DNA of 64,000 bases, from positions 372,001-436,000 of the forward strand of contig CDROCS010001419.1 in assembly GCA_977020255.1 (NCBI GenBank). The letters are read 5' to 3'. Below, piece after piece: positions 35,500-64,000 of this stretch (position 1 is the first letter of the stretch; every line of letters starts with the position of its first letter). A program made the translations under genes and the position numbers. The notes beneath the pieces were generated by a model, which was given only the letters and a program-made list of their open reading frames with translations, ran no database searches and was not told the DNA's origin. Origin of the DNA: Obrimoposthia wandeli. Its lineage: Eukaryota.

Positions 35500-36433
35500 A
35501 TTAATGAAAAAACTTATTTAAAGATTAAAAATCCTATCAATCTGTAAAGTCAATGGCTTCGAAAAGTCTGATGATGATCGAGTCTGTATTGATTGCAGAT
35601 CCTCTATCTGGTTTTGACCAGGGAAGGGATCAGACAGCTCAAAGATGTTGGTCCAATTTCTCAAAGAGCACATTAATGAACAATTTTGGAAAACGAAATT
35701 AATCAATAAATATATAGCACCGGCAATTGTTCGCAAATCTCTCAATATTTGTCTGAACAAGTCAAAGTTGATTATTTTCAGTTATGGAAAATTCGATTTG
35801 ATCTTTTCACAATTAGTCTCCTATTTGTAATTGACATAGATTATAGAGATATTTTGCTTAGAAAAATATTAATCTTGAAAATATTATTAAAGATTATAAT
35901 GTTAAAAAAGATAATTTAAAAAAAAACATGAGATACATCAAATTTATATGATGTTCCGTCTTTTAAATGTTTATTAAATTTTGTGTTATATGTAAGATTA
36001 GTTTTTTTATTATTGCAACTTTCAAATATATCTCCAAATATGGAAGATACTCATCCTCTAATTCTCTTTTTATAAATTTTTACCTTTTGATTCTTTTTGA
36101 TAATGTTTTAATTATTCTTATCATTTTTAGACCACATAACCATGTTAAACCTCGAGAAGAAGAACAATAACTTGAATCTATTTCATAATGTTCTAAACAG
36201 ACATTTCTAAAGTTTTCAAATATATCAGATAAGATAAACACATCAAATTTTAAATCTTTCATAGTGTAATGATACAATGTTTTACAACTTAAATCTTTCC
36301 AATTAATTTCAGATGCTTCATAATCATCTTTGGATATTTTAGAAAGTATTAACATTATAAAGAATTTATTATGTGGAGGTAATTGTGTTTCATTCATTAT
36401 ATCTTCAATATCATTAAAATCATTTTAATATTT

Positions 36434-36478
<45 letters not shown>

Positions 36479-36900
36479 TTAAAATTTGATAATCTTCAAG
36501 TTTTAAAGTTTTACCGATTGCTTCTAAACTAAAAGGTGTGAAGAATCTGAGAATCTGGAAGCATATAGAATTATAATCTTTCCAATTTGTACAAATATAT
36601 ATTCTTCATCAGTTTTTGAGCATATTTAAACTTTTATATTTTTAATAATTTAATAAAGATTAAATGTATATCATATTTCGAACCATTGTAAAAGTTAAAG
36701 TACATAGGTACAAAATCTATAAATTTAGCTTTTAGATTACATTTGGAATATGCAGCACATATATATTTTCCATTTGAATGATCATGATCTCTAACTTTAT
36801 TTTTTTACTATTCTTTTTACTATTTAGTAAATTAATAGATTCATTACAATAAAAACATTTATCAGAATTCATATATTCTTCTTTTTTTAATTGTTATATT
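35500..36900 (-). mobile_element. Polinton/Maverick protein-primed DNA polymerase B relic, downstream part
   Basis: KVRDHDHSNGKY..A..KCNL (EndoVII-like), RFSDSS, ETQLPP..ISKDDY..LKFDVFILSDIFENFRNVCLEHYEID..GLTW..LK; left end approximate. Confidence 0.78.
36439..36474. repeat. (AT)n microsatellite
   Basis: Uninterrupted AT run. Confidence 0.9.
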
Positions 36901-36980
36901 CATTTCTATATTTATTTTAAAATATTATTAAAGCCTTTTGCTAGAGCTATGAATGTTTTCATAAAGTTTTCTGTTGCATC

Positions 36981-39020
36981 ATGTCCATAATGAGTAATAC
37001 ATTGAGATTTATTGTGAAGAAATTGTGGTTGTATGAAATAAGTCTGGCATCAAAGATCGGTATTGGAGATAATATTGTGAAATTTGCGCTAGTCGCTGGC
37101 CTGCCTTCAGACACTTCAGAAGCTCTGGAGATTTCGATGAAGTCTGGAAACTGTTCCTTAGAGCAAGTTATAGCTGAAGCCCGGATTAGGATGACAAAAT
37201 TGGAATTAAAGGTATCTTCCAAGTTGGAGATGTCGCAGCTCATTATAGAAAAAGGATAATTAGTTCCGGAATCAAATGCTTCCGATGTGGAGATGAAAGC
37301 CATGTTTCTAGAAACTGCTATGTGGAAGAAAAACGCAGATGCTACATCTGTAATATAGTTGGTCACTTGGCGTCAGTATGTCCCAAACGAGAATCAAAAA
37401 ACCACGAAGGGAGTTCGTATGCGCCAGCAGCTCTCCCAATGATACGGCGTATATTCCAACAGTTATCATCCATGTTGAAACTAAAGCTTTAAGAGCAATG
37501 GTTGATACGGGAAGTCGTGGATGTCGTGGACAAGGATTTCCATGCAAAGTTCGAGAATGGCAGATGGATGGCGAGATGGGAATGGAAAGAAGGAATCATG
37601 AAGCCAGCTCTACAGAACCAGGTAAGTCAATATCGGGTAAAGGATGAGGCACTAAATCAATTTGAAGAAGAGATTGAAGAATGGATAGAACAAAGTTGTC
37701 TGAGAAAGTATGATGGTGAGCACATTGGTGTAATACCTTCCATGGGCGTTCTACAGCAAATCAAAGGAAAAGTTCGTCCTGTGATGGATTACCGAGAGCT
37801 TAACGATTATGTTTCCAGCCATACAGCTCAAAGTTAAGTATGCGGCGAAAAGCTGAGAGAAAGGAGGAGATTGGGAGACAACTTGAGCATTGTTGATTTA
37901 AGGAAGGCTTATCTACAAATCCATGTTGACCCAAGTCTGTGGAAGTATCAGGTTTTATTTTACAAAGGAGTTCGATACTGTTTAACGCGTCTTGGTTTTG
38001 GACTCAACGTAGCTCCAAAGATTATGTCAGCAATCGTAAGGAAAGTTTTGTCAATGGATCAGACGGTGGCGAGTGGAACGGATTCTTACGTAGATGATAT
38101 AGTTGTTAATGAAGAGGTAGTATCTACTGAAGAGGTTATAAATATGTTATTAAAGTACGGTTTGGAATCGAAGCCGCCAGAAAAACTGAATGGTGGTAGA
38201 GTGCTGGGACTGCAAATTCAACAAAACCAAAATGTGATGGTATGGAAGTGCGACAATGTACTAGCTAAAGTGAATGACACTTTAACACGAAGGCAAATGT
38301 TTTCTCATTGCGGTCAAATGATTGGACACTTTCTCAAAGTTGGATGGTTGAGACCGGCGTGTAGTTATTTGAAAAGATTGACAAATGGTACTAATTGGGA
38401 AGACAACGTCGAGACCAAAATTGTTGAAAAGCTAAAAGAAATTGAGGAACGTGTTTCGGAAAACGATCCTGTGCGATGAGTCTGGAGTGACTGATACGAT
38501 TGAATGAACAGTATGGTGTGATGCTAGTAGTCTCGCAATGGGAGTCGTAGTGGAAATTGATGGTTCGGTAGTTGAAGACTTCAGTTGGTTACGGAAAGAA
38601 GATGACTCCTCTCATATCAATTTGGTAGAGTTAGAAGCAGTTGTCAAAGGACTTAATTATGCGATCAAAGGGAGGCTGTCGCAAATTCTTGTTTATGCAG
38701 ATTCATCTACGGTCCATGGTTAGATAAAGTAAATTACATCGGGATACAAACGAGTAAAAACGGATGGTCTTGGATTGGCACTAGCTAATAGGCGACTGAA
38801 TCTATTGAAAACCATAATAGAAGAATGCAGACTAACTGTTAATATCAGGCTAGTAAAGTCATCAGGAAACAAAGCCGATGAGCTTACCAGAGTTTCCCAA
38901 AAGTGGCTCAATTGTGCAAGTGTGGCATGCAGTAGCGTAATCGGCAAAGAAGCAGAAATATTGGCAGTACACAAGCTGAATCATTTTGGCGTTGACAGAA
39001 CGGCCAGAGACAATTGCGAA
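36981..39020 (+). mobile_element. Ty3/Gypsy retrotransposon fragment (gag with two CCHC knuckles, protease start, RT, RNase H, integrase start)
   Basis: CFRCGDESHVSRNC and CYICNIVGHLASVC; MVDTGS; VMDYRELN, DLRKAYLQI, RLGFGLNVAP, YVDDI; WCDASSL, HINLVELEAV; HKLNHFGVDRT; several stops and a deletion. Confidence 0.9.
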
Positions 39021-48516: not shown

Positions 48517-49980
48517 GCTTCAATCAAGGCCTCTTTGAGCTCAGAGGATATTATAAATTATGAAGAAAACTACATTTTCCTATGATTTTCTCTGAAAAAC
48601 GACTAACACCGGAGTTACATCAGTCCTAAAGTTTTTTAAAATATAATATTATAAACCATAATCTCCGAATGTTCATAAAACATTTAATAGTTCTTAAACT
48701 ACCATCCTTTCATCGTTAGAGGTATATTTTCTATGTATTTTAATCAAAAAAGCTGCACTTATGACTTTTTACGGCACTATTCAATTTTTTAACACACCCT
48801 ATAGTAAAAAATCACAAACAACTTTTTTATTTTGCCCTGTAGGTGTGTGACTGCATGCATTCTATAGTAAGTAATTATTCAGTTTTTACGGCAAAATTCA
48901 TTTTGGATAGATGCTGTTTTTTATCGGTAAGTTTTACTATGTATTATTATTAATCTTATCTTATACTATAGGATTGTGTGCCGACTTTTTACAACGGCAC
49001 TAATCAGTTAGATTAGGTGTATTTGTATGTCTAATCATGCCGTTAATCTTTAGTGAAATTCGATGTTCACATATAAGAAATAAAACAATCAATCCAAATG
49101 GTACACTGTAAAAAACTGTATTTTATAAAGATTATGAGTGTCTAGATCTATTTTTATGCTGATTATATAAAACCACTCTTGAATTTGTATCACATCTATT
49201 TTTCTCGCAAAATGCACATAAGCTATTTGTACAATACTGTTAGGATTAGGATTTGATAAATTTTAAATAATTAATCTAATTTATATCAAAATAAAATCCG
49301 TGAAAGTAAGGTTATAAATTAAATAAAAAATTATATTGTTAAAATAAATCGATGAGAGTAAAAGGCAAATTAAATATTTAGGACCTTGAAAGGTCATGTT
49401 CAATGTGTTGTATATAAGGAAGTTAAAGTTAAATTAAAAAGGACCAAAAAATTAATTAAGAAATAGAAGAAGAACAAGAATTAAGGTAATATTAGCAATT
49501 GACTGAATTATTCAACAAGAATTAAGGTCAAACGTCAGAAATCTCGCGACGCAGCAGCAACAGTGAATCATCGTGAGTCACCCAGGAAGTAAGGTGATAA
49601 TAGAAATTGATTGAATTATTCATCACACAATTAAGGTCAACTGTCAGAAATCTCTGCCCATCGTGAATCACCAGCCGACAAGAGGATTATTGCTCGCGGA
49701 CACACAGTCGCTTATCTCGGTCGAGAGTGGAATTTAGCAGACACACACAAGAAAATAGAAGCAACAGCTGTTTCGTGGGGTGAGTGTCGATTAGTAATCA
49801 GATCGATTAATCATTGCCTTGCAGGACCGTAAGAAGAGAAGGAAGGAAATTCGAGTGACAGCGACACACCACGAGAAATTTAGACTATATAAGTCTAAAT
49901 TATTATTAAATTTGGCAGTAGCAGTTATTATTTTGCCGAAAGTTGGAATCAGAAAGACTCGTGATTAAATCCGAGCGGAA

Positions 49981-50197
49981 ATTTGTTAAGGAAAATCTCG
50001 GCGATAGATTCCGAGTACCCAAATCAAGAGCGACAATTTGTTAAAGTAAGTCTTGGCGATATATTCCGAGCAACAAAATCAAGAGCGACAATTTGTTAAA
50101 GAAAGTCTCGGCGATAGATTCCGAGCACCCCAATCAAGAGCGACAATTTGTTAAAGAAAAACTCGGCGATAGATTCCGAACAACCAGATCAAGAGAA
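49981..50197 (+). repeat. 55-bp tandem repeat (~4 copies) in solo LTR
   Basis: ATTTGTTAA recurs at 49981, 50036, 50091 and 50146; each unit holds a CTCGG-N9-CCGAG-like hairpin. Confidence 0.9.
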
Positions 50198-50394
50198 GCA
50201 AAAAGCGAAAATAAAGAAGAAGTACAACTAAAAACGAGGAGAGACCGTCAGAATCACCCAGAGCGAGAACCGTACAGTGCGATCACAGCACGCCAAGGGT
50301 ACCGAGTAAAGGATTCGACTGACATCTGAGGAGGCAATCTAGACCGGACGCCAGGTTATACGGAAGAGGTAAGGAACAAGCGCGGAGATAAAAG

Positions 50395-50720
50395 TAGAAC
50401 GTGATTTTAAATAAGTAATTGTGAAACCGATTTTGGAGAATTTATAACTTGATTTTAAATAAGTAATTTTGAAGCCGATTTTGGAGAATTGAGAATTTGA
50501 TTTAAATAGTAAAGTGAAAGACGATTTTGAGAATTTGATTTAAATAGTAAAGTGAAAGACGATTTTGAGAATTTGATTAAAATAGTAATTTGGAGACCGA
50601 TTTTGAGAATTTAGAGCTTGATTAAAATAGCAATTTGGAAGTCGATTTTGAGAGTTTTGAGTTGAGATAAATAGTAATTTGAGAACCGATTTTGAAAGTT
50701 TTGAGCCGTAATTTATAATT
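50395..50720 (+). repeat. Degenerate ~38-bp tandem repeat in solo LTR
   Basis: About 8 copies of gattttgagaattt..gattnaaatagtaa. Confidence 0.8.
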
Positions 50721-51335
50721 TGGATATCGTACAATTTGATAAACATATAAATTTGATATCGTAAAATTTGATATCATATACTTTGATTTGAAAGCCTCTA
50801 TAAATTAGAGCAAGTTTGTAATCGTTAAATTACTAGAAAGACTCTATAAATTAGAGCAAGTTTTGATTTTGTGCAATCACCAATATACTAGAAAGACTTT
50901 ATAAACCTTCAACCCTAAAATTAAAATCGATACGTGGATCAATCCCACTTGTGTAGAGACTTACAGAAGTCTTAGGAATTTTATTGTAACTTTTTAGAAA
51001 TACGTACTTAAACGTATTAATTCGTGTTAGTCTAGTGTGTTAATAAATAAACGATTTCCTACAACTAGAAAGCATCGTTCTAACCCCTTCAGATTAAGAC
51101 ACAACAAAAAACCTTCAGATAAGAATTGAGACAGGCAAGCATAACATTAAGTAGGCCACAACCAACCTTAAGTCCTGCGTCTATAGAACTCACGTTGGGG
51201 CCCTCCATTCAAGAGGATCTATATTAGAACACAGTTTCATATAGAAACCCCAACAATACTATATATTTTAAAATATACAAACATTTAAATTCATCAAATA
51301 TTTTCTTTTTGATAATCTGTTAGAGTTTGATTGAG

Positions 51336-51593
51336 AAATATCTTGCCTTAAACTTCATGAGTGGTAAGAAAATAACATTAGAGGTCAAGTCAGATGAGTA
51401 AGTGGAGAGTATCTAAGCAAAAATTGAAGATAAGAAGTGTATTTCATCAGATAAACAAAGACTTAGTTTTGAAGGTAAAGTACAACAAGATAATCATATG
51501 CTGACTGAGAACGGAATAAAGAGAAGAAGCACCATCTACTTGGAATTACAATTAAAATGTGAAACAAAGGGGATGATCCAAGTAAATGAATAA
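51336..51593 (+). pseudogene. Diverged ubiquitin-like pseudogene
   Basis: MSGKKITLEVKSDE*VESI*AKIEDKKCISSDKQRLSFEGKVQQDNHMLTENGIKRRSTIYLELQL aligns with ubiquitin [36 protein letters not shown]; two stops; no terminal GG. Confidence 0.8.
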
Positions 51594-54341
51594 TGGGAAA
51601 GCGGTTATTAAAAACGCAACTCATGATAAGGCGTAATATAGTGAAGCGAGTATTTAGGACAGACAAATAAGTGAAGATAAAGATGGGGAATTATGAGCAA
51701 AGGTAGGCGAATAGCTAAATCGAATTTTGTAAATGGCTATTGAGTTGGAAGAAGAAAACCGAGAAGAGGAGTTACAAAGAGATTTAAACGAGTTTGAAAA
51801 ATTACATGTAGGGTTTTGTCACCAAATTGAACAACATACATAAATAGAAATAGAACGTTGAAGAATGTTCAAGTAGAATGAAAGTAAGAAAATATTTAAC
51901 TAAATTAAGAAACTTAACATTGGAAATATTTAATGGAAAGTCCTATGCATATCAATTTAGAAAGCGACATTCAACGTATTGATTTAATATGTGGCGGATG
52001 ATAAGACGAGTTAGCTTCTTCGTCTGCATCAGTATTTGGGACGTGATTTCCGGAATATTTTTATGTAACTTTGTTTTCTGAGTAATTTAAAGGATTCCAA
52101 ATCTATTATACTATATCATTTTCGTTGAAGTTTTGCTATTGATAATTTTCAAAGTGTTGTAATGCCTAAATCTATTGAAGTGTTTTAAAGTGTTATTTTA
52201 CCTTAATTTCAAGAAACCTTTACTAAATTAAGTACAAATTGTGTTTTGTTTTTTAATGAAAATGAAATATTACCATTCACATATTAGTAGCAGGTAATTA
52301 TAGGTAGAAACTTACTTATAAAAGCAAAGTATAGAAAATGCTCTTTCTAAGTCTCAAAATGGATATCAACGTGTCAAAGATAATTTCTCTTGAAAAGAAA
52401 TGATAGCCCCAGAGAAATGTGATCCATTATTCACTTTGACTTTGAGCTGAATGATTAAAGGACATTAAGCTGTAATTGAAGCCTCGGTTAACTTTCACAA
52501 TGTCATTGATAATAAATGTAAAATTGGTTGCGAAGAGTTTCCATTAATTTTGGTAATTATCATTTACAATAATTATTCCAGTGATAAACAAGCAAACACA
52601 TATTACTCTTTTATTAGAAACTTCTTGAACTATCGTAATAACACTATATGAAAGTGTAACTTTTATCAAATTGCACATTTAAAGGTTTCAAAATGTATAA
52701 AGATATTAATTATTTCAAATTTAGTCATTTATTTCTATCAATATCATTTGTATTTTTATCATTGCGTGACATTTATATGACTAGGATCATTTTTAAATCC
52801 CCTTTTTCCCATAACTAAAAATAAATATATATATAACATTACAGTGATCAAAAACACTCATCCAGTTTATCAATGAGGACAGTAGGTAAACTTTAGAAAA
52901 TTTCTATTTTGTACTCATATTGCCTGACATGATCAGAAAGACCATCTTAAAGAATATATTTCTGTTAGAAAAACAATAAAAAAACTACACAAGAAAACAG
53001 CTAAGCAAATTTAGTATTTAATGCCAGTTAACAGACAACAGCCGTACAGATCCTACAGAGAATTTTAGTCATAATATTTCTGATGATTAAGATAATTTCA
53101 ATGGAATCCTGGTTGTGACTTGAATAAAAGTTTAAGTCAAAATGCCAAAAATCAAAATATTTTTTCCTAAAAATTATCTGACACCAGAGAACATGATTTT
53201 GATCCCACTTAACAGACCACAACCGTATACAACAGATGACATATTTCCTGAACCTACAATGATGATTATCATATTCGCCTAATATCTTTGAATGTCATCA
53301 GCAGAGAAAGAATACTTTCATATATGATACCAGATAATTAATATATTATGGTTTTATGGTTTCTAAAAAAAGGAAGTATTTCTAGAAAGATAATATTATT
53401 TTATTAATATCTTATTTTTGTAACGCATTTTGTTATTTTATATTATTTCATACATTTCTATGTATCCTATGTTAAATTCCAAATTTGATAAAAATAATTA
53501 TTTGATAATTAATTATGATAAGAAAATCGTGAATGTGAATAACAGTATTTATCTACATCGTATTAGCAGATAATGAAACGAAAATTTATTGCTACATCTA
53601 CTGAGGTGGAAGAAAAGTTAACTAGCGGTTAGTTTGTCACAAATATTGAAATGGGGATAGAGAAGGCTAAGAAGCACGTTTCAATTAAGACGTTACAGGA
53701 TAGCAATTTGGCTCAACTATTGTCAAATAAAATAATAAAGCTAATATTTAAAGTATTGGACAATATAATTATTCATTATTAATTCTGCGATAATGATGTA
53801 ATTATTGACCTCAACTTCAATAAAAACAATATCGTTAGATTAATAATGAATAATTCTATATTGTTTTCTTTTGTTTGACGGCATTTCAAAATAAATCATG
53901 GTAATTAACTTTTTCCAGTAGTAAGATTCTCAAAATTTTGTAATAATGCAGTAGAATCTTGTGAAATTGAAAACGTAATAGTATAAAAAACATGCTTAAT
54001 CAGTAATTGTAGACAACATGCAACATTGGTATCATATGATACTATGATAACCAAGTGATATAAAATATATAATTTTGACCTATACTCATACAATGTAATT
54101 TGTCATTATTTTTATGCATAGCTAAACAATGTATATAAATTTGGTCAATATACCTAATTAAAATAAACTGAATAAGCATGTACAAAATAATAATACCAAA
54201 TTTGCGAAAACAATTTTGCAAAATTGTCAATTGACTCAAGCATCAATTTTGCAAAATAGTGCTTATTTTATTAATTAGGTAAAAAGAAGCGATTTGCATT
54301 TGTTTTTCTATTTACAAGAATATTTATTTCACAATTTGAAA

Positions 54342-54785
54342 ATGGATCCAATGCGCAAACTATTTGAAGATAAAATAGCCCAGATGATCAAATCCAAAGG
54401 AGTGAATGCCTCTGCTGTGATGTCGAGACAACAGTACGACGAGATCCTGATTCGATTACGACATCTGGAGTCGGATACGGACTCAAAGAAGAGTGCCAAG
54501 GACTATCGACTTATGAGGAAATACGATATTATAGAGTATGGCGTCGACGATACTGCGGTAAGCAAACTCGCAAAAAAAGCTACTGCTTTGCAATTCATCT
54601 GTGTTGATGGGCTCTTCAATGTGACCCATACAAATCATCTCGCTGAAGGACATGGAGGACCACGAATTACATATAGAGCAGTTTGTGAAAAATATGCCAA
54701 TGTAACTCTGGAACAGATTGAGGTGTACCGGAATATATGTGAGGACTGTCAATTGAAGAAAAGCATTAATAGCATTTACCAATAA
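54342..54785 (+). pseudogene. Ginger/KRBA2-SCAND3-like integrase N-terminal fragment (HHCC zinc finger), truncated before the catalytic core
   Basis: HLAEGHGGPRITYRAVCEKYANVTLEQIEVYRNICEDCQLKK; no DDE core follows. Confidence 0.7.
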
Positions 54786-56150
54786 GCAACAACTTTGAGA
54801 AATTGTGGTCAATACAACAATTTGATCTAACATATCTAATGAATATCGAGAAATAGCTTTTAAATTATAAAATAATTACTCATTTCAATTTGTATTTTAA
54901 TACATGTTTTATTCTTTGTTTCAGATATATAGCTATAAATTTAAAAGTGAAGCAAAATCGTTTTCGAAGATGGTTTACTACTTTAGTAATCCTTCTTGAT
55001 GCCAGCGTGTCAATGAAGTTGTTGAAAAAGAAAATGATGCAGAATGAAGATGACAATGAATTCAGAAATGAAGAGAATTCAGATGATGACAGTTATGTTT
55101 TACTTCGTAAACATAATTCAAAAGAGTCAGATTCTACAAACAGAATAATTATTTTAAATACGAACAATTAAACAAATTATATTGGCATGCTGTTTCTGGC
55201 TTCTGATTTGTACATGAGTATGTTGCCAAGAAAACTAAGCCAAATAACCAAAGTTGAATGATGACAGTTAATGGGATTGGAAATTTTGCATATCATATAT
55301 GTTTATAAGCGGTAGCAAAGCTAATTATTATGCAATTGTTTAGTTTGATGTTTTGTGCAAATTGAGCATCATAATACATTTATATCAACAATATTTATAC
55401 TAAAAAATGTAGTTTTTTCAAACTTTTCAATTTTTGATTTGATTACCCCGATTCAAAATAGAATTACACAAAACTAATGTTTAATATGTTTGGTAACAAA
55501 AGAGTTAAATGTATATTTCAACTGTAGCATTTTACGCCCTAGTGAGCTGTTGATATTAATGTTTGCGAAGAATAACTATATATAATAGAATATAAAAGTG
55601 TATTGATAAAATAAATTCGCAGTTTTATATCTTGAAGACAACACAGTTTGTACTAATCACATAGATGAAGAACTATTCAAATATACAGGCATTTTAAAAT
55701 ATTTTATACAGATAAGATAATTTTACATGGTTATCTGATTGTTTATTTAGTAGGAAATGTTTTTAAGTAATGTTGAACAATTATTTAATTTAGGGGAATA
55801 TTATATGGGTAACTTATTACACCATATCTAATGTTTTATTTGTCCTTATAAAACTAAATACATCATTTTAAAGTGCATATAAAATTGGGTTGAGTTCAAA
55901 AGATTCTGCAGTCTGTTTACTTCAAATGCAATTGCTATATAACTGTTGGGGTTTCTATACGAAACTTGGTATAGAGCCTCTTAGTGTGCGGAGGGCCCCA
56001 ACGTGAGTTCGATTAGAAGCAGGTCTTAAAGTTGGTCGTGGCCTACTTAGTGTTATGGTTGCCTAATCTCTTGTACTATCTGAAGGTGTTTGATTTGATG
56101 TCTCTTAGTCTGAAGGGTGTAAAAACAACTTGTTCTAATGTAGGAAATTG

Positions 56151-56156
56151 TTTATT
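56151..56156 (-). terminator. Candidate LTR polyadenylation signal AATAAA
   Basis: Same position relative to the LTR end as the AATAAA in the solo LTR. Confidence 0.5.
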
Positions 56157-56426
56157 CAAAATTCACGTAACTAACACCACAATACGTTTATGTACGTATT
56201 TCTAAAAAGTATGATAAAATTCCTAAAGGACTTCCGTGAGTCTCTACAAGAAGTGGGGATGAACCACGTATCGATTTTACGTTCAGGTGATTAAGTTTCT
56301 TAGGTTTAGTCTTCTTACTCAGGTTGGTTAATCTATAACGCAACTCTCTTAATTTTCTTCGCTCCTACTTCTTATCTCTAGCTAAATGTTTCTTTGTTCC
56401 TTACTCTCTCTGTGTGTGTTTGACCC

Positions 56427-56858
56427 AAATTGTCTACTGTAGACAAGGGATCTCCTAAAAACCTAATTGTCAAGATGACAATAAAAACTTACTCCTAATT
56501 GTCAACTACGGACAATGAACGAACCGAATTGTCAGCTAGTGGACAATGAGTCTTACCGAATTGTCTACTAGGGACAATGAATATTTATCCGAATTACCAA
56601 CTAGGGGCAATGAAGGAACCTAATTGTCAGCTAGGGACAATGAATCTTACGGGAAAAACGTCTGGTAGGTTTCCTAATTGTCGCTGGGGACAATGAATAA
56701 AGGTCCGATCCTAATTACCAACTAGGGGCAATGATTGTGGTAAAGAGACAGTGATCCTAATTACCAGCTAGGGGCAATGAATTTGTGTATGATTAAGAAA
56801 ATATAGAATTACCAACTAGGGGTAATGAATATATCCTAATTGCCTACTAGGGGCAATG
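56427..56858 (-). repeat. Array of 12 palindromic ~23-bp units separated by unique 7-31-nt spacers
   Basis: Minus-strand consensus cATTG(T/C)C-CCTAG(T/C)N-G(A/G)CAATt with a 6-bp stem and usually a 7-nt loop. Confidence 0.9.
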
Positions 56859-56958
56859 ACTGAACCTAGTCTGTGTTCTTACCAGTTACAGCAACTCGTG
56901 GGACGTCCGGTGTAGGGTCCGTATGTGGTGTTTGCGAGCCTGGCGGAATCGTCTTCGA

Positions 56959-57453
56959 AATCGACTGTTCGTCTCTTCAATCAACGGTTCGTCTTCTTAA
57001 ATCAACGGTTCGACTCTTCAATCAACGGTTCGACTCTTCAATCAACGGTTCGACTCTTCAATCAACGGTTCGACTCTTCAATCAACGGTTCGACTCTTCA
57101 ATCAACGGTTCGACTCTTCAATCAACGGTTCGACTCTTCAATCAACGGTTCGACTCTTAAATCAACGGTTCGACTCTTAAATCAACGGTTCGACTCTTAA
57201 ATCAACGGTTCGACTCTTAAATCAACGGTTCGACTCTTAAATCAACGGTTCGACTCTTCAATCAACGGTTCGACTCTTAAATCAACGGTTCGACTCTTCA
57301 ATCAACGGTTCGACTCTTAAATCAACGGTTCGACTCTTCAATCAACGGTTCGACTCTTCAATCAACGGTTCGACTCTTAAATCAACGGTTCGACTCTTCA
57401 ATCAACGGTTCGACTCTTAAATCAACGGTTCGACTCTTAAATCAACGGTTCGT
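56959..57453. repeat. 20-bp tandem array (ATCAACGGTTCGACTCTT[C/A]A), 22 exact units plus flanking degenerate units
   Basis: Exact 20-nt periodicity from 57001 to 57440 with a single variable site. Confidence 0.98.
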
Positions 57454-57531
57454 CTGACGAGGGGATTGTTGCTTCCTGTCTTTGTTTCTTCTGGCGATTC
57501 CGTATTTGTGATTCTAGCTGGAAAACCTGCC

Positions 57532-57539
57532 TTTATATA
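57532..57539 (-). promoter_or_regulatory. Candidate LTR TATA box (TATATAAA)
   Basis: Lies on the minus strand upstream of both arrays, preceded by two GCAGC.GTCAA.TGAT.GAC repeats. Confidence 0.55.
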
Positions 57540-58221
57540 TTGGCACTGGACGTCAATCAGTTGACGGCTGCGTTGAGTCTTTCTTCAGCGAACCCGGAGA
57601 GAATATTGCAATGTCAATCAATTGACAGCTGCAAACAAAATTTAGTTTATTGCACGAAAATGTGCTTACCTTGGGGATCCTTGAGCGACGGTTGTAATTA
57701 ACCGTTTTTCTTTTAATTAACTAAATTTCTTGCGACTTCTGGGTTAATTAATTTAACTTATATACATCTCACATTGTACACGACCTTCGTGGTCCTCCTA
57801 ATTTTACCCTAATATTTCACTATTTTTACTTCTAAAACTTAAATTAATATTTTAATTTAATTTTCGACCTTGCTTTCAAGGATTTTTATTTTAGTATTTA
57901 ATCAACTAAAATATTTAATTTTCTTAATTCTCAACCTTAACATACCTCGGGGGTTCCAAAAAAGTTACGTCCCCGGAACGTATCGATTTTACTTAAATAA
58001 GCCTTTGGCTGTTGATTTTAGGTTCATCCCTACAAAATCAATCATTCAACCTCAACAAACATGCCCAAAAAAATTTTTTCCAAAATCCCGGTTTTTAGTG
58101 GGAAACATAATATATAAGTTGGAACATGTCTCAATTTATACACTATTACTTATAACAACTAAAATTTACATACAAGATTACACGATAACCAAGGTCAGGA
58201 AGGAAAGAAGGGAGGAAAGGA

Positions 58222-58758
58222 TTAATTGTCGTATGTCAAGTCAATTGTAATTGTTGGCTGGTTCCGACTGGCCAGGTAGCGTAGAACCTGTTCCAGGGGA
58301 AGGTCGGGAAAGGACGGACTGTCCCCGTTGTACAAATGGAGTTGCTGGCTCCGGGTCAAATGCGGGCTGTCGATGAACAGGTCGAAGTGCTGCCTGTTCA
58401 TGTTATGGCTTTCAATCCAGTGCCGTCTGGCCTGGAACCACGAGTGGCAGTCTCGACTAGACCGCCATCTCTCGCGGACGCCCAGTTGTGTGTCGCGCCG
58501 GCGTGCGAGACACACGTAGCATTGGCAATGGATGCCACCAATGCAGCTGGCAGGCGATCGGGTGCCTTTGTGTCTTCCGCGGCTCTGGAGTGTCCATTTG
58601 GCGAAGGGTGTCCGGCACAGTGGACAGGTGATTTGTCCGGTGGTTCGAACCTTGGTCCACAAATAGAGGCACTCCTCGTGAAATTTGTGACGGCAGCCGA
58701 CAGGGGATGCTGATACCGCCCAAATCTTCTCCATGCATACGGAGCACAACATCTGCAT
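58222..58758 (-). CDS. RING-H2 protein 3 (178 aa) with a CxCxxC cluster and a C-terminal SIM-like ITIDLT
   Basis: CSVC..CRHKFHEEC..W..CPLC; intact ORF. Confidence 0.9.
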   Translation of the reverse strand: MQMLCSVCMEKIWAVSASPVGCRHKFHEECLYLWTKVRTTGQITCPLCRTPFAKWTLQSRGRHKGTRSPASCIGGIHCQCYVCLARRRDTQLGVRERWRSSRDCHSWFQARRHWIESHNMNRQHFDLFIDSPHLTRSQQLHLYNGDSPSFPDLPLEQVLRYLASRNQPTITIDLTYDN

Positions 58759-59092
58759 GAGAAAATGACTCCTTTCAATTTGGGGTTCACCGTTCTCATC
58801 GTTAATTTAAATTCTATTTCAAAATGAATCCTTAGTTATCTAATCCTACCGAGTTTTGTTTCGATTTTAGGCATGTTTACGCATTCACACTAAGCATAAA
58901 AATTGTCTTTTTTAGAAATTCAGTATAATAATTACAATTTCAGTTAAACATCATACATAAAAATGGTAATGGTCAATTTACAGTTCACAAGATTATATAA
59001 TTATGATTACAATTATGGTAGCTAATTTATCGCGGTATGCGATACACAGGGTAGTTCATGATGTCACGTTCAAGTCAGAAAGTTACCTTCGA

Positions 59093-59398
59093 TTATTGTT
59101 GGGGATTGGGCTGGCCTGTGCTTCGCTCCTCCACGCAGAACGAGCACCAGCAATCGCAGATGGTTTTCCAGCAGTGTACGATGGGTACCACTGCTTGGAG
59201 GCTGTCTTGGTTGTACACGTAGTGTACTGAGAAGGTCGCTCTGCACATCGGGCAGGTTGGGAAGTCGAGGGGATTGTTGCTGTTGGCAATGGGGATCCAC
59301 GTCTCGAGGCATTCGACGTGGAAAAGGTGGTCGCAGTTGTTGGGCTTGGTGTAGAAGTCCACGATGCTCTCGTAGCAGATGGAACATTCTCCAGACAT
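59093..59398 (-). CDS. RING-H2 protein 2 (101 aa) with C-terminal Cys cluster
   Basis: CSIC..CDHLFHVEC..W..CPMC, then CWKTICDCWCSFC. Confidence 0.9.
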   Translation of the reverse strand: MSGECSICYESIVDFYTKPNNCDHLFHVECLETWIPIANSNNPLDFPTCPMCRATFSVHYVYNQDSLQAVVPIVHCWKTICDCWCSFCVEERSTGQPNPQQ

Positions 59399-59458
59399 TA
59401 CTGTGGGAGGGTTGATGTTGAATTTGGGCTCGATTGAGGACTGGTGGTTGTGTGATCT

Positions 59459-59758
59459 TTACACAAAAGTGGTCTGATTTTGTCGATCTGACAAACAGTA
59501 ATAACACCAACACTCTCCGAAATTCTTCCAGCAGAATACCACCTGTACATATACATCCCTTTGGTTGGGTTCTAACATGACGAATCTTGCGAATTGTCTT
59601 CTGCATATAGGGCAACGAGGGTATGTTGGGTGTCCGAACTGTCCATAAGTTCTGATCCATGTCGATAAACATTCCTCGTGGTGTAAATGGTTGCAGGTTT
59701 CGGGTCTTGTTCTTCGTTCGGTTAGATCTTCTAAACATATTGGGCATTCTTCGGCCAT
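59459..59758 (-). CDS. RING-H2 protein 1 (99 aa) with C-terminal Cys cluster
   Basis: CPIC..CNHLHHEEC..W..CPIC, then CWKNFGECWCYYC. Confidence 0.9.
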   Translation of the reverse strand: MAEECPICLEDLTERRTRPETCNHLHHEECLSTWIRTYGQFGHPTYPRCPICRRQFARFVMLEPNQRDVYVQVVFCWKNFGECWCYYCLSDRQNQTTFV

Positions 59759-59794
59759 TCTAAATACATGATGATGATTAATTTCTACATGAGT

Positions 59795-59802
59795 TTTATA
59801 TA
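59795..59802 (-). promoter_or_regulatory. Candidate internal TATA box for the RING cluster
   Basis: TATATAAA about 37 nt upstream of the RING1 ATG, in an AT-rich spacer. Confidence 0.45.
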
Positions 59803-59881
59803 CTGCTACTATTTGTACAATCGCTTCTAGATATTTCTACATATTTCACACACTAATTTATCTACAACCTCCTCTGACTCA

Positions 59882-62134
59882 TCATATCTTGATGGGAGGT
59901 GGAGGTAAGGGTCGCAATTCCACTTCCTCCATGATGGGTGTGTCACAGCATCGCAATCCTTCGCATTTTCGTCGTATTCCTGGGCATACTTGACTGCCTT
60001 TTACGCACACGATTGTAAGTAGAACCACCGCTGTTGACACTACGGCCATTCCAATTAGGGCATTGACTGCTGTTATTCCGCTGTCTGATGTTTTATAATC
60101 ATACTTCATTTTGTTGTTTGTTGGTTCGAATGATATTTCCATGGGTTTTGATCGGTTTCCATGTATTATATCCGATTTTCTAAAAATTCGGGGATTTGGG
60201 TGTTTTGTTTCTGATGGAACAGGTATTATTATTTTGGATTGGAAATGATGTTTGGGATCTAGTGGGATCGTTCCCCTCACTCTTGTCCTCTTAATAATTG
60301 TACTTTGGTTTCTGGGATTGGACTCTTTTTCTTTCGCTTCTGTCTTTGTTTTGATCACTGTCGGTTTCTTGGAATGTCGTTTACTTTCGATTACCTTTGC
60401 CTTCTTTTTGACTAGGATTGGTCTTCTGGGAATGATTTTCCTGGGTTTGATACTTATACCGTATCTGCGAAATCGACGGTTCTGGTATCTTAGAGTTATG
60501 TAGAATATTTCACCTGTTATTATCATGATTATGGTCGAGGTCTCTGTAGAATTACTGGCAATTCGATTACACAGACATTCTGTGTTAAAATGTGGTACTA
60601 ACATTTGGCTTTGGATTTCGAATCTGATTACGCCATCTGGGTTGGGACACATTACTGTCACGCTGTCAGTTTCTAGCAATCTGAAAAATAACCTAACGGA
60701 ATTCCATACGGCTTTACGTCGTCTACCTGTGATCATAATCCTGTCGACAATTTTCCAGATGCGCTCATCTCTAGGTAATATTAATGACTTTGTTCGGATA
60801 CTTTGGATAATCCGCTTCCTCTTTGATATTGTTATCCGTAGGTATAACACTCTTTCATGATGCAATAATATTAAATTGTAAACGGGTGTATGTTGGTCGA
60901 TTTTTATTCTGACCTGTCGGATGACATACAATTTCTGATCGATATTGTCAGTTGCTGACGTCTGTAGATGAATGTCTACTACGTGATTTGTTTTTAGTAG
61001 GGGAATTTCTATGTATATTGCCCGTATTACGTCTTGTCTCCATTTACTGATCATGATCTCATAACTAGCCTTGGTAGTGGTGATTTGTACGATCAGCATG
61101 ATTCCTATGATCGTTCGATTCCTAAACTCAGGAACTTCAATGAAACAAGTCAAATTACTCATATAGTACGGTCTTTCCTCGATGTGTTCGTATATCGTTG
61201 GCTGGTACTCTGGTGCTGGTTCATCTAAAAATGGTGGTCTTGGTATTATTGTGTTGAATTTTTGTAAGTTCATTTGACCTGTTCGTCTTGCGAGATCATG
61301 ACGTTTCTTTTTTGATCTCGACTCTATCTTTGAACAACAAAACAAGATGAGTAATATTAATATTATAAATCCAATGATCAGTGCGAGTATTGGATTAACC
61401 AATTCTAGAATACCATAACGTACTGCTGGTATTCCTTTACTCTTGATGGTTAATATCTTAAATTTGTGTGCACTTTGGTTGGACATGTCACTGAGAAGCA
61501 CTATTTTAGTTTGTCCAAATATGTAGTCTTCACATGTGACAACACTAACTCCATAATGTCCATTAAGTGTTATCATTTCGGTCGCTGGGACTATACACAT
61601 TCGTCCTGGACATCCTTTTACACACATGATCATCACGGCTCTACTGTGGGATGTCTTGATTATTTCTAGAGTGTTGTCTAGATTTCTCAAATGTAAATTA
61701 TATTCGGATAGTGTCATCAATTCGGCTTTACTGGTTGGCATGGCTTGCAGTACCAATCCAATTACTATTCCATAGATCAATCCTTGTGCAACGGTGCACA
61801 GGGCCTTGACTGACCTTTTGCAAAGGGTTTTAATTATCAATCGTTTGAGAGATATCTGCTTCTGATTTGTTCGTTTTGTTGTCTGTCGTTGTTTTGACAT
61901 CTCCTCGATTCCATCTCGTCCGATAATCAACTGTACCGGTTTACCTTGTATCGTCAACTTTCCGAATCCATTTTTGGCGGACAAGCATGTTTTATGTCCT
62001 TCCATTGTTTCAATTATCACTCTCTTACTTCCATACTCACGTGTTTTGATGACATCGCCGTTGAATATATACGTTGGTCCTTTTGTGTCAGCATCTTTTG
62101 TATTTCCTTTACAACTCGTTTTCTCCGCTTGCAT
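59882..62134 (-). CDS. 750-aa membrane polyprotein of unknown family (two signal-like segments, two TM anchors), in an env-like position
   Basis: Uninterrupted ORF with hydrophobic blocks GLIYGIVIGLVLQA, ILALIIGFIILILLILFCC, IIGIMLIVQI and ALIGMAVVSTAVVLLTIVCV. Confidence 0.75.
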   Translation of the reverse strand: MQAEKTSCKGNTKDADTKGPTYIFNGDVIKTREYGSKRVIIETMEGHKTCLSAKNGFGKLTIQGKPVQLIIGRDGIEEMSKQRQTTKRTNQKQISLKRLIIKTLCKRSVKALCTVAQGLIYGIVIGLVLQAMPTSKAELMTLSEYNLHLRNLDNTLEIIKTSHSRAVMIMCVKGCPGRMCIVPATEMITLNGHYGVSVVTCEDYIFGQTKIVLLSDMSNQSAHKFKILTIKSKGIPAVRYGILELVNPILALIIGFIILILLILFCCSKIESRSKKKRHDLARRTGQMNLQKFNTIIPRPPFLDEPAPEYQPTIYEHIEERPYYMSNLTCFIEVPEFRNRTIIGIMLIVQITTTKASYEIMISKWRQDVIRAIYIEIPLLKTNHVVDIHLQTSATDNIDQKLYVIRQVRIKIDQHTPVYNLILLHHERVLYLRITISKRKRIIQSIRTKSLILPRDERIWKIVDRIMITGRRRKAVWNSVRLFFRLLETDSVTVMCPNPDGVIRFEIQSQMLVPHFNTECLCNRIASNSTETSTIIMIITGEIFYITLRYQNRRFRRYGISIKPRKIIPRRPILVKKKAKVIESKRHSKKPTVIKTKTEAKEKESNPRNQSTIIKRTRVRGTIPLDPKHHFQSKIIIPVPSETKHPNPRIFRKSDIIHGNRSKPMEISFEPTNNKMKYDYKTSDSGITAVNALIGMAVVSTAVVLLTIVCVKGSQVCPGIRRKCEGLRCCDTPIMEEVELRPLPPPPIKI

Positions 62135-64000
62135 CCGGCGAATGTTGTTGATATTCGGTCAAGTGTGTGCTGTCGGTCAGCTTCGTAATCTATTCGGAAT
62201 TGATTCAGTATTCTGTTTTGTGGGTAAAATATCGCTTCATTTACTATGTTGTCTTCGATCCTTTCGTCTAGATACACAAGCACTTTGTTCGTTGGTCCAT
62301 TTGGTCTCTTCATCTTTACAAACTGAAATCTTTTACTGTCGGTTCTCATAGATCGAAGACATTTTCGGATGATCCACACATCAATTAGTCCTAACAACAC
62401 TAATAGCATCATCAGTGCCGGTGTATGGTACTGTATGGTGTAATTGTGGATTTCGTTGAACCAGGAACTATTTCCATGGTTGGAGCCTATTTCCTGTGCT
62501 CCCGTTATCGGCATTAAACAACTTAACAAGCCTATCGCTAGCAATCTTTGGTATTGAAAGCTGGGCACTGTTGTTGTAGCTTCATTTGTTTCTCGTTGTT
62601 GTTTCCTCTTTTCGGTGTATTTTTCTATTTCTCGAACGAGTAACGGTTTGAATTCCGTATTCGGTCTATTCTGTTTGATGTAGACCATCGCTTCTTCTGG
62701 CGTGTGACCATGGTACTCTACCAACAAGGATACACCTATGGTAGGCGCTAACATCGTACCTTTTTTCTGATATATCAGAACGCCGTTTCCTTCTGTGACT
62801 TCCGCTTGGATGGTTTGAGTCAATTTCGTCAGATGTTGTTGTGCATCGTTTATCTCTCGATTAGAAGCATGTATGTATCGAGTGGTGTCGTCTTCAGTAT
62901 TTTGACACAGACTAATTATCTCGTTTCCGACTTCAACAATATTGATTACTCGGTTGATACTGTGGAACTTTAATCCAGCAGTATCTATATCTCCTGGATG
63001 ACATAAAAATACTTTTGGCATTATCTGTGTAATTTTGTCGACTCCGGCTAAAAATAACCCAGTCAGTGATAATGCTTGGAGGAAATTCTTTTCCTTTGGA
63101 TCCTCAGGAATGTCGTCCATCCGTCTTTGTTCTTGCAACAGAAGTTGGTAATTTGCCAACTGTCCCAAAAAATTAAGATTTGGGTTTGCAATACTTCTTC
63201 TCTCCTGTAGGTATTTTAACGCTTCTAGTACCTGCATTCGTCTAGTCTTTATTAGATATGCTAATACTAGGGTTGCTGATCGAGAAATTCCTTTCTGACA
63301 ATGTACCAACACTTTTCCTTGGTTTCGGAGTTCTCTGTGAAGTATTTCGTTTGTTTCTACGAACCATTCGAGAAGATTAGCGTCCATTGAGTCTTTTACT
63401 CTTAATGTCATAGCTCTGATCGTCTGGTATTGCGATTTGTGATTCATTGTAACGTTGATCACATATGTTATCCCTTGTTCCAACAGTTTCTTTTCATCTG
63501 TTGCATCCTCCACATTTCCGAGGTATAACTTACCTGGAATGATCTCACTCATTGGTGGCATTAATTCTGACTCTTCAAGTTTTAGTCTTTCTAATCTCTT
63601 CTCTATCTGTTCGTCGATGTTAGTTAGTTTTGCCAGTTTCTTTCCTCTCAGCATTCGTATTGCTGGAGGGATATTCATCTTTGTCTCTGATGTCTGTTCC
63701 TTTGTTGAGTCTTCTTCCGACTCGGTCTCCTCTGCAGATTTAATTCGTCTTTCTTGTATATTCTGTTTCACGAATTCTATATTTTGTCTTTTTCTGCTCT
63801 CTTTAGCGAATTCAACCTCCATGGTTCTTCCGAATCGCTCTATTATGTTATCTTCGGATTCTGTTGATTCTGTATCGTTACTTTCCGGTTCGCTGTCTTC
63901 ACTAGACTCGCTCGAAGGGTATTCTGGTATGTCTGTCTGGACTGAAATTAATGAAGGTGTTAGAATAATTGGATTGATTTCCCCTTCGTATTTGTGAATC
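62017..64000 (-). CDS. Dual-specificity phosphatase plus pseudophosphatase polyprotein with a downstream membrane module; 5'-partial
   Basis: IIPGKLYLGN...VHCQKGISRS...RSIANPNLNF, then a second DSP-fold repeat lacking the catalytic motif. The frame stays open upstream of Met 63822 to the window edge (at least 660 codons). Confidence 0.9.
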   Translation of the reverse strand, partial: IHKYEGEINPIILTPSLISVQTDIPEYPSSESSEDSEPESNDTESTESEDNIIERFGRTMEVEFAKESRKRQNIEFVKQNIQERRIKSAEETESEEDSTKEQTSETKMNIPPAIRMLRGKKLAKLTNIDEQIEKRLERLKLEESELMPPMSEIIPGKLYLGNVEDATDEKKLLEQGITYVINVTMNHKSQYQTIRAMTLRVKDSMDANLLEWFVETNEILHRELRNQGKVLVHCQKGISRSATLVLAYLIKTRRMQVLEALKYLQERRSIANPNLNFLGQLANYQLLLQEQRRMDDIPEDPKEKNFLQALSLTGLFLAGVDKITQIMPKVFLCHPGDIDTAGLKFHSINRVINIVEVGNEIISLCQNTEDDTTRYIHASNREINDAQQHLTKLTQTIQAEVTEGNGVLIYQKKGTMLAPTIGVSLLVEYHGHTPEEAMVYIKQNRPNTEFKPLLVREIEKYTEKRKQQRETNEATTTVPSFQYQRLLAIGLLSCLMPITGAQEIGSNHGNSSWFNEIHNYTIQYHTPALMMLLVLLGLIDVWIIRKCLRSMRTDSKRFQFVKMKRPNGPTNKVLVYLDERIEDNIVNEAIFYPQNRILNQFRIDYEADRQHTLDRISTTFAGCKRRKRVVKEIQKMLTQKDQRIYSTAMSSKHVSMEVRE

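What the first reader, a model, noticed from the sequence alone, without database searches (positions are those of the whole stretch)
56427..56858. CRISPR-like architecture in an LTR: 12 conserved RNA hairpins with unique spacers and compensatory mutations
Twelve ~23-bp palindromic units are separated by unrelated spacers of 7-31 nt. Stem variants covary: AUUGUC/GACAAU, AUUGCC/GGCAAU and AUUACC/GGUAAU are all perfect. The three AUUGCC/GGUAAU copies pair as G-U on the minus (element sense) strand but would be A-C mismatches on the plus strand. That polarity argues for selection on RNA structure. The 7-nt loop keeps a self-complementary CUAG (CCUAGUU/A), as kissing-loop dimerisation signals do. 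Lying between the TATA and AATAAA, the array would be at both ends of the genomic RNA. Inferred roles are a multivalent Gag-packaging or dimerisation scaffold, an RBP landing pad, or a processed small-RNA array. An alternative is paired Sox-type ACAAT DNA sites.
Basis: partly seen in the sequence, partly recalled or inferred. Interest (0 to 1): 0.85.

Follow-up and report, generated by a model that had tools for sequence, protein, structure and literature searches.

The report
Palindrome-unit minisatellite inside an LTR
The twelve small palindromes are real, but they are monomers of a decaying ~30-bp tandem repeat in the fast-changing middle of a retrotransposon LTR, not a CRISPR-like array, and the case for a selected RNA structure rests on only two compensatory changes.

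Summary
The sequence observation holds. Twelve units of the form ATTRYC-loop-GRYAAT lie at 56429-56857 and nowhere else in the 64 kb (8 exact pattern hits against 0.08 expected). On the minus strand 71 of 72 stem cells pair; on the plus strand 68 of 72.

The "unique spacers" do not hold. The array is a tandem repeat of ~30-31 bp with a 95-bp, three-monomer higher-order duplication. Its linkers are paralogous, and there is a 13th, decayed unit.

It sits in a ~2-kb LTR-like repeat, R (55944-57942, TG...CA ends). A second, inverted copy, L (49238-51255), has a 4-bp target duplication. L aligns with R only over the first ~100 nt and the last ~350 nt. At the same place L carries unrelated repeats with no predicted structure.

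The covariation is real but thin: at least two double substitutions, all in five related units. The G-U polarity amounts to one event. Each hairpin is weak (-3.6 to -5.9 kcal/mol) and alternative pairings out-compete it in the predicted ensemble. There is no Rfam match and no relative in any collection searched.

Best reading (0.4): a lineage-specific multimerised inverted-repeat module in the variable, U3-type part of an LTR. Rivals: a functionless minisatellite kept symmetric by template switching (0.3), and a sense-strand RNA hairpin array (0.25).

The parts
56429..56857 (-). Array of 12 inverted-repeat units. Each has a 6-bp stem (ATTRYC/GRYAAT) and a 5-8-nt loop. Start-to-start spacing is 37, 32, 30, 32, 33, 30, 54, 37, 46, 48, 31.
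   Evidence: covariation
56477..56650 (.). Higher-order duplication: a 95-bp block of three monomers present 1.8 times at 83% identity. The underlying period is 30-31 bp.
   Evidence: linker paralogy
56734..56755 (.). Decayed 13th unit lying inside the linker after unit 9. Its arms no longer pair.
   Evidence: 14 of 22 identical in register to the real unit at 56623-56644; only 14 of 55,000 background positions reach that level
55944..57942 (-). LTR-like repeat R (1999 bp) that holds the array. On the plus strand it begins TGTTGGGG and ends CCTTAACA. Flanks are TAAC / TACC (3 of 4 match). No PBS or PPT is recognisable on either side.
57533..57539 (-). TATA-type motif on the minus strand, upstream of both arrays and set in a small palindrome (57528-57545).
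   Evidence: copy L has the counterpart at 49886 inside a perfect 10-nt palindrome
56151..56156 (-). AATAAA on the minus strand. It is the only AATAAA or ATTAAA downstream of the 57539 TATA, and it is conserved in copy L.
55944..56287 (-). Conserved 3' block of the LTR (78% identical to L). It may hold promoter-proximal sequence, R and U5.
57845..57942 (-). Conserved 5' end of the LTR (74% identical to L).
56949..57455 (.). Second, young tandem array in the same LTR: 20-bp unit, about 25 copies, 94-97% matches, with 40- and 60-bp higher orders.
49238..51255 (+). Related LTR copy L (2018 bp), inverted relative to R. It has the 4-bp target duplication ATAC, so it is a solo LTR. The layout is the same, but it carries unrelated 38-48-bp and 55-bp repeats where R has its arrays.

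Best explanation
The array is a degenerate, higher-order tandem repeat in the fast-evolving middle of a retrotransposon LTR.

Shown:
- The monomer is about 30-31 bp: a conserved stretch of about 26 nt containing a 6-bp inverted repeat, plus a short variable linker.
- A three-monomer block of 95 bp was duplicated.
- The linkers fall into a few paralogous types.
- One monomer has decayed.
- A related LTR has quite different repeats at the same position.

Inferred:
- The array grew by slippage, unequal exchange or template jumps between monomers.
- The symmetry of the arms was kept by a symmetry-preserving process.
- The array most likely acts as LTR tandem repeats usually do: as a lineage-specific, multimerised cis-regulatory module in the U3-type variable region, read on the DNA by a factor that recognises the roughly 26-bp inverted-repeat unit.
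- Because it lies upstream of the LTR poly(A) signal, it is also carried passively in the 3' end of any transcript that ends there.
For: - Tandem and higher-order periodicity and paralogous linkers.
- A decayed unit.
- The whole 26-nt unit is conserved, loop and non-pairing flanks included, not the stem in particular.
- L and R align only at their first ~100 nt and last ~350 nt, as expected if the middle is a variable U3-type region.
- L has unrelated, unstructured repeats at the same place.
- A second, young array lies next door in R.
- LTR identity: TG...CA ends and a 4-bp target duplication around L.
- Tandem repeats in LTRs and UTRs of LTR elements are a described, hypervariable feature (PMC9659126, PMC7004042).
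- A cluster of twelve ~26-bp protein sites in a retrotransposon is known from gypsy (PMC6385973, PMC7800606).
Against: - Arm-to-arm covariation is not something a dimeric DNA-binding factor selects for: 5 units changed both half-sites in a matching way.
- The half-site spacing varies from 5 to 8 bp in 4 of 12 units, which dimeric factors seldom tolerate.
- No factor is identified.
- If the TATA at 57539 is the promoter, the array is downstream of the start site, not in U3.
- There is only one copy of the array, so nothing shows conservation across insertions.
Confidence: 0.4

Rival explanations
1. A functionless minisatellite. The LTR's middle region spawns tandem repeats. This one happens to have an inverted-repeat monomer. 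Arm symmetry is restored or extended by intra-strand template switching during DNA replication or reverse transcription, and the cores are homogenised by conversion between monomers.
For: L carries wholly different repeats at the same site. There is a higher-order duplication, a decayed unit and a very homogeneous neighbouring array. Units 1 and 2 lost the usual loop but gained extra inner pairs, as template switching would produce. Unit 6 has the linker of unit 3's type but a core identical to unit 9, which fits conversion. Template switching is documented as a selection-free source of compensatory changes in hairpins (PMC8794818, PMC5453318).
Against: The cores are far better kept than the linker centres. 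For example, units 3 and 5 differ at 2 of 19 core positions, while their linkers share little beyond their ends. Without selection, that needs conversion limited to the cores, or hypermutable junctions.
Confidence: 0.3
2. One reading: on the minus (sense) transcript the units fold into about twelve short stem-loops with a 7-nt CCUAG-type loop. These act as a multivalent RNA scaffold for protein binding, export, packaging or loop-loop contacts. They would be present at the 3' end of every transcript, and at the 5' end too if the 57539 TATA is the promoter.
For: All 12 units fold on the minus strand, against 9 of 12 on the plus strand. On minus, 71 of 72 stem cells pair, two pairs show double changes and one shows a G-U intermediate. 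Within-unit pairing exceeds pairing with other units' arms (98.6% against 93.2%). Stems persist despite loop-length changes. The minus strand is the sense strand by the TATA/AATAAA order in both copies.
Against: There are at least two independent double substitutions and not clearly more, all in five related units, and the polarity rests on one event. Hairpins are marginal (-3.6 to -5.9 kcal/mol) and mostly displaced in the predicted ensemble. The antisense strand folds at least as well. The 4-bp CUAG self-duplex is weak (-2.9 to -3.4 kcal/mol). Loops and unpaired flanks are as conserved as the stems. The related LTR has no counterpart, which speaks against an essential role such as packaging. 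There is no Rfam match.
Confidence: 0.25
3. A homologous-region-type repeat (palindromes acting as enhancer or origin) belonging to an integrated large DNA virus, represented by the neighbouring minus-strand block of RING-finger, phosphatase and orphan ORFs.
For: The neighbouring 58225-63999 is denser in long intronless ORFs and richer in G+C than the rest of the window. The 750-aa ORF has no relative anywhere.
Against: The array is inside a dispersed 2-kb repeat with LTR ends, and the other copy has its own target duplication. There is a single array, not several dispersed ones. Nothing was found in the viral contig scans.
Confidence: 0.03
4. A CRISPR-like memory array with acquired spacers, or a processed small-RNA array.
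For: Only the superficial look of repeats alternating with variable stretches.
Against: The linkers are 11-35 nt, paralogous to each other and part of the repeat period. The context is an animal genome rich in transposon debris. No cas-type domain appears in the neighbours. The 6-bp stems are far too short for miRNA-type precursors.
Confidence: 0.01

Closest known systems
Hypervariable tandem-repeat regions of LTR retrotransposons (for example the 3' UTR repeats of plant Ogre elements; PMC9659126 citing Macas et al. 2009; PMC7004042)
   Same: Short tandem arrays inside the non-coding part of an LTR element. They differ completely between related lineages, have higher-order structure, and vary in copy number and decay.
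   Different: Here the array is in the LTR itself, and its monomer is an inverted repeat with matching changes in the two arms.
Su(Hw) site cluster (insulator) of the Drosophila gypsy retrotransposon (PMC6385973, PMC7800606)
   Same: About twelve copies of a ~26-bp protein-binding unit with variable linkers, within a few hundred bp of transcribed non-coding retrotransposon sequence.
   Different: The gypsy cluster lies in the 5' UTR downstream of the LTR, and from my own knowledge its sites are not palindromes. No sequence likeness was tested here.
Tandem enhancer repeats in the U3 of retroviral LTRs (my own knowledge)
   Same: Multimerised short modules in the most variable part of the LTR, differing between close lineages.
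   Different: Those usually have 2-4 copies of 40-100 bp. Here there are 12-13 copies of ~30 bp, and whether the position is U3 or R is unsettled.
Multi-stem-loop response or dimerisation elements in retroviral RNAs (my own knowledge)
   Same: Structured RNA derived from LTR or leader sequence that binds several copies of a protein or contacts a second RNA.
   Different: Those are single complex folds conserved among relatives. This is a repeat of weak 6-bp hairpins, absent from the only relative seen.
Template-switch-generated and template-switch-maintained hairpins (PMC8794818, PMC5453318)
   Same: Compensatory-looking changes in both arms of a short inverted repeat without selection.
   Different: Described for single hairpins in host genomes, not for arrays in an LTR. 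Not testable from one copy.
CRISPR arrays
   Same: Partly palindromic repeats alternating with variable stretches.
   Different: The linkers are paralogous and short. The genome is eukaryotic, there are no cas genes, and the repeats are only ~82% alike.

Membership tests
CRISPR array | Spacers of similar length that are unrelated to each other | tested here: not met
   Linkers are 11-35 nt. 13 of 55 pairs score at or above the level reached by at most 5% of shuffles, and there is a 95-bp higher-order duplication.
CRISPR array | Prokaryotic or viral context with cas genes or a leader nearby | tested here: not met
   Neighbours are RING-finger, phosphatase and transposon-derived ORFs. The window also holds a Bel/Pao-type gag fragment and a 5.8S rRNA.
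LTR of an LTR retroelement | TG...CA ends with a short terminal inverted repeat | tested here: met
   In sense orientation both copies begin TGTTA(A/G)G and end CCCCAACA.
LTR of an LTR retroelement | 4-6-bp target-site duplication | tested here: met
   ATAC lies on both sides of copy L. For copy R, which holds the array, the flanks are TAAC / TACC, 3 of 4.
LTR of an LTR retroelement | Two direct copies around an internal gag-pol region, with a PBS and a PPT next to the LTRs | tested here: inconclusive
   No second direct copy lies in the window. No tRNA-type primer site or purine tract is seen next to R. The window ends 6 kb to the right, and the ORFs there are not gag or pol.
LTR of an LTR retroelement | Promoter and poly(A) signals in order on one strand | tested here: met
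   TATA at 57539, then AATAAA at 56156 on minus, with the same order in L. This is sequence level only; no transcript data.
Selected structured RNA | Covariation at several pairs from several independent events | tested here: inconclusive
   2 of 6 pairs have double changes and 3 never vary. All variant units share one change, so there are at least two events. Shuffle control 1/500.
Selected structured RNA | Structure kept in relatives | tested here: not met
   Copy L has no inverted-repeat units there, and its repeat region folds no better than shuffles (z -0.09).
Selected structured RNA | Match to a described RNA family | tested here: not met
   No Rfam match up to E = 5 over 55500-58300.
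Retroviral kissing-loop dimerisation signal | Self-complementary loop on a stable stem in the 5' leader, conserved among relatives | tested here: not met
   A 4-nt CTAG is in 8 of 12 loops, with self-duplex only -2.9 to -3.4 kcal/mol. The location is in the LTR, not a leader after a primer site, and it is absent from L.
Minisatellite / higher-order tandem repeat | Head-to-tail period with homologous full monomers and block duplications | tested here: met
   Periods of 30 and 95 bp, paralogous linkers and a decayed monomer.
Homotypic cluster of protein-binding sites (gypsy insulator type) | Many copies of one 20-26-bp motif with variable linkers | tested here: met
   A conserved unit of about 26 nt is present 12 times.
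Homotypic cluster of protein-binding sites (gypsy insulator type) | A known protein that binds the motif | not testable with these tools
   No motif library or occupancy data is on hand. The Sox-type ACAAT core is lost from both arms in 5 of 12 units.
Homologous region (hr) of large DNA viruses | Several dispersed palindrome arrays in a viral genome | tested here: not met
   There is a single array, inside an LTR-like repeat, and no viral contig matches.

The most novel reading that the evidence does not exclude
The units are read on the sense transcript as a dozen short stem-loops with a shared CCUAG-type loop. That would form a multivalent RNA landing pad in the LTR-derived end(s) of the RNA of a retroelement, evolved by tandem multiplication. 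It would be a natural counterpart of engineered hairpin arrays.
Probability: 0.25. Interest if true: 0.65.

Novelty: new member of a known kind. Interest (0 to 1): 0.3.

Why it matters
If the array is only an LTR minisatellite, it is one more example of how quickly LTR interiors breed tandem repeats. It is also a caution that palindromic monomers imitate 'conserved hairpins with unique spacers'. If further copies showed that the stems are maintained, it would be a rare natural case of a multimerised hairpin module in a retroelement. It would also be a clean test bed for telling selection on RNA structure apart from template-switch mutation.

Tried and rejected
- **Looking for other copies.** The unit pattern found nothing in viral contigs. 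In metagenome contigs it found two single chance palindromes and no arrays. The 20-bp neighbour repeat found nothing in viral contigs. So no cross-copy covariation test was possible.
- **Identifying the host or element through proteins.** The four neighbouring ORFs are not in the protein collection. The 750-aa ORF has no homolog in either protein search. The phosphatase ORF's best hits are about 34% identical animal DUSP-type proteins. The Tc1-like transposase's best hit is a 63% identical environmental protein. Viral loci searches with two ORFs found nothing.
- **Structure of the 750-aa ORF.** Mean pLDDT was 38.8, too poor for a fold search, so none was run.
- **Decayed units in all long linkers.** Only the one at 56734 is supported.
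- **A shared GACAATT motif in the repeats of both LTR copies.** There are three tandem copies in L, effectively one event, so it is not significant.
- **Foldback-type element with L and R as long inverted arms.** Rejected. L has its own perfect 4-bp duplication, and the arms align only at their ends.
- **Consensus lines.** The alignment tool printed consensus lines by itself.

Full report
**1. What is in the sequence**

Between 56429 and 56857 there are twelve units of the form ATTRYC, a loop of 5-8 nt, then GRYAAT. A search with a variable gap finds 11 of them. The twelfth (unit 1) has a changed last base but pairs further inward. None occurs anywhere else in the 64 kb. With a fixed 7-nt gap there are 8 matches against 0.08 expected from shuffles.

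| Stem type (left arm / right arm) | Units |
|---|---|
| GTC / GAC | seven units |
| ACC / GGC | 6, 9, 10 |
| ACC / GGT | 11 |
| GCC / GGC | 12 |

**2. It is a tandem repeat, not repeats with unique spacers**

- Tandem Repeats Finder reports a 30-bp period (4.9 copies, 74% matches). It also reports a 95-bp period (1.8 copies, 83%) over 56477-56650, which is a duplicated three-monomer block.
- Start-to-start spacing is 30-33 bp for most of the left half of the array (units 2-7; the first interval is 37 bp) and 31-54 bp further on.
- The linkers share their ends. Of 55 linker pairs, 13 score at or above the level reached by at most 5% of shuffles, where about 3 are expected. Linkers 5/11, 8/11, 3/6 and 4/7 are the closest pairs.
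- The linker after unit 9 contains a 13th unit that has decayed. It matches the real unit at 56623-56644 at 14 of 22 positions in register, a level reached at 14 of 55,000 background positions. A gapped test did not support decayed units in the other long linkers.
- The conserved stretch is about 26 nt. The loop and the non-pairing flanks are as well kept as the stem, and only the 4-8 nt at the linker centre is free.

**3. Pairing and covariation**

| Measure | Minus strand | Plus strand |
|---|---|---|
| Units folding alone into a 6-7-bp hairpin | 12 of 12 (-3.6 to -5.9 kcal/mol) | 9 of 12 (units 6, 9, 10 have an A.C) |
| Stem cells forming standard pairs | 71 of 72 | 68 of 72 |
| Shuffles reaching the observed covariation score | 1 of 500 | 0 of 500 |

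- Two of the six pairs show changes on both sides, and three never vary.
- Within-unit pairing (98.6%) is only a little above pairing of a left arm with another unit's right arm (93.2%), or with the neighbour's (63 of 66).
- All five variant units share the U-A to C-G change. Within them one pair runs G-C, G-U, A-U.
- The smallest history is therefore two double substitutions, and the G-U state is one event later copied three times. As evidence of strand polarity that is one event with even odds.

**4. Folding of the whole array**

- The minus strand gives z = -2.79 and the plus strand z = -3.77.
- In the predicted ensemble the local stems have a mean probability of about 0.29 on minus and 0.23 on plus. 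The right half of one unit pairs well with the left half of the next.
- The 4-bp CUAG loop self-duplex is worth -2.9 to -3.4 kcal/mol.
- No Rfam family matches the region.

**5. Context: an LTR**

- The array lies in a 1999-bp repeat, R (55944-57942).
- A second copy, L (49238-51255), lies inverted 4.7 kb to the left.
- In sense orientation both begin TGTTA(A/G)G and end CCCCAACA. L is flanked by ATAC on both sides, so it is a solo LTR. R is flanked by TAAC and TACC.
- L and R align only over the first ~100 nt (74%) and the last ~350 nt (78%).
- Between those ends both have the same layout: a repeat region, a short G+C-richer stretch, a second repeat region, and a TATA-type motif inside a small palindrome.
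- The repeats themselves are unrelated. L has 38-48-bp and 55-bp repeats, with no inverted-repeat units, and folds no better than shuffles (z -0.09).
- R's second array is a very homogeneous 20-bp unit in about 25 copies.

**6. Strand, and U3 or R**

- On the minus strand of R the order is TATA (57539), both arrays, then AATAAA (56156). There is no other poly(A) signal between them.
- L has the same order on its own sense strand, and the AATAAA is conserved. Minus is therefore the likelier sense strand.
- If that TATA is the promoter, R would be about 1.4 kb, which is unusually long to my knowledge.
- The conservation pattern fits the usual LTR plan at least as well: variable U3, conserved promoter-proximal sequence, R and U5. 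On that plan the start site would be inside 56160-56290 and the array would be in U3.
- Either way the array sits upstream of the poly(A) signal, so it would be in the 3' end of transcripts ending there. Its presence at the 5' end is not established.

**7. Neighbours**

To the right of R, on the minus strand, lie:
- three RING-finger ORFs within 58225-59836;
- an ORF open over 59885-62158 (its ATG-to-stop ORF codes for 750 aa) with predicted membrane helices and no homolog in either protein search, and an unusable structure model;
- a dual-specificity phosphatase ORF that is open to the window end (62020-63999).

No gag or pol is seen there. No primer-binding site or polypurine tract is recognisable next to R. 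R may therefore be a solo LTR next to unrelated genes, or the 3' LTR of an unusual element. The window cannot tell which.

**8. Weighing the readings**

*What favours structure or symmetry over a dimeric DNA-binding factor:*
- the matching arm changes;
- the persistence of stems through loop-length changes;
- the extra inner pairs in units 1 and 2.

Template switching gives the same picture without selection (PMC8794818).

*What speaks against an essential RNA role such as packaging or dimerisation, and fits an LTR's variable regulatory or minisatellite region (PMC9659126, PMC7004042):*
- the absence of anything similar in L;
- the weak hairpins;
- the decayed unit;
- the higher-order duplication.

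*What favours some constraint:* the cores are better kept than the linker centres.

My estimates are:
- 0.4 for a lineage-specific multimerised cis-module of the LTR;
- 0.3 for a functionless minisatellite;
- 0.25 for a sense-strand RNA hairpin array;
- the remainder for the viral hr-type and CRISPR-like readings.

**9. Limits and a slip**

- Only one copy of the array could be studied. No collection on hand holds the source genome or a relative.

Noticed in passing
window 56949-57455: A 20-bp unit repeated about 25 times at 94-97% identity, with alternating C/A variants that give 40- and 60-bp higher orders. It lies in the same LTR, about 90 bp from the palindrome array, and is far younger-looking than that array.
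   Followed up: partly
window 58225-63999 (minus strand): A compact block richer in G+C: three RING-finger ORFs (58225-59836), an orphan ORF open over 59885-62158 (750 aa from its first ATG) with predicted membrane helices and no homolog among 1.84 billion representatives, and a dual-specificity phosphatase ORF still open at the window end. It is unclear whether it belongs to the LTR element, to another inserted element or to the host.
   Followed up: partly
window 31218-31370: A complete 5.8S rRNA (130 bits, model 1-154). No 18S or 28S match appears anywhere in the window at gathering score, nor within several kb on either side (26000-37000) in the more permissive E-value search. It is an isolated copy or an rDNA fragment.
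   Followed up: partly
window 56266-56280 and 57978-57992; also 50922-50935 in copy L: A 15-nt stretch of the LTR's conserved 3' block recurs exactly, in the same orientation, about 35 nt outside the other end of R. The E-value is borderline (0.023 in a small search). Unexplained.
   Followed up: partly
window 55934-55943 and 51256-51270: Both LTR copies have TATATA within 2-4 nt of the U5-side junction. This hints at a preference for TATA-like target sites.
   Followed up: no
window 57528-57545 and 49877-49901: In both LTR copies the TATA-type motif sits at the centre of a small palindrome, perfect 10-nt arms in L, although the sequences differ.
   Followed up: no
window 12974-18669: 126-bp direct repeats 5570 bp apart (88%) bracket minus-strand fragments of a Bel/Pao-type gag (DUF1759) and an integrase core. 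No ORF there exceeds 138 aa. This is a much-decayed LTR element, and it marks the host as an animal. The breaks were not counted.
   Followed up: partly
window 27940-29064, 24428-25729, 37871-38479, 54279-55168, 51417-51590: Other mobile-element debris: an intact-looking Tc1-like transposase ORF (374 aa; best relative 63%, environmental), a DUF4371 ORF, a reverse-transcriptase/DUF7047 fragment, an integrase zinc-finger fragment on the plus strand between L and R, and a ubiquitin fragment.
   Followed up: partly
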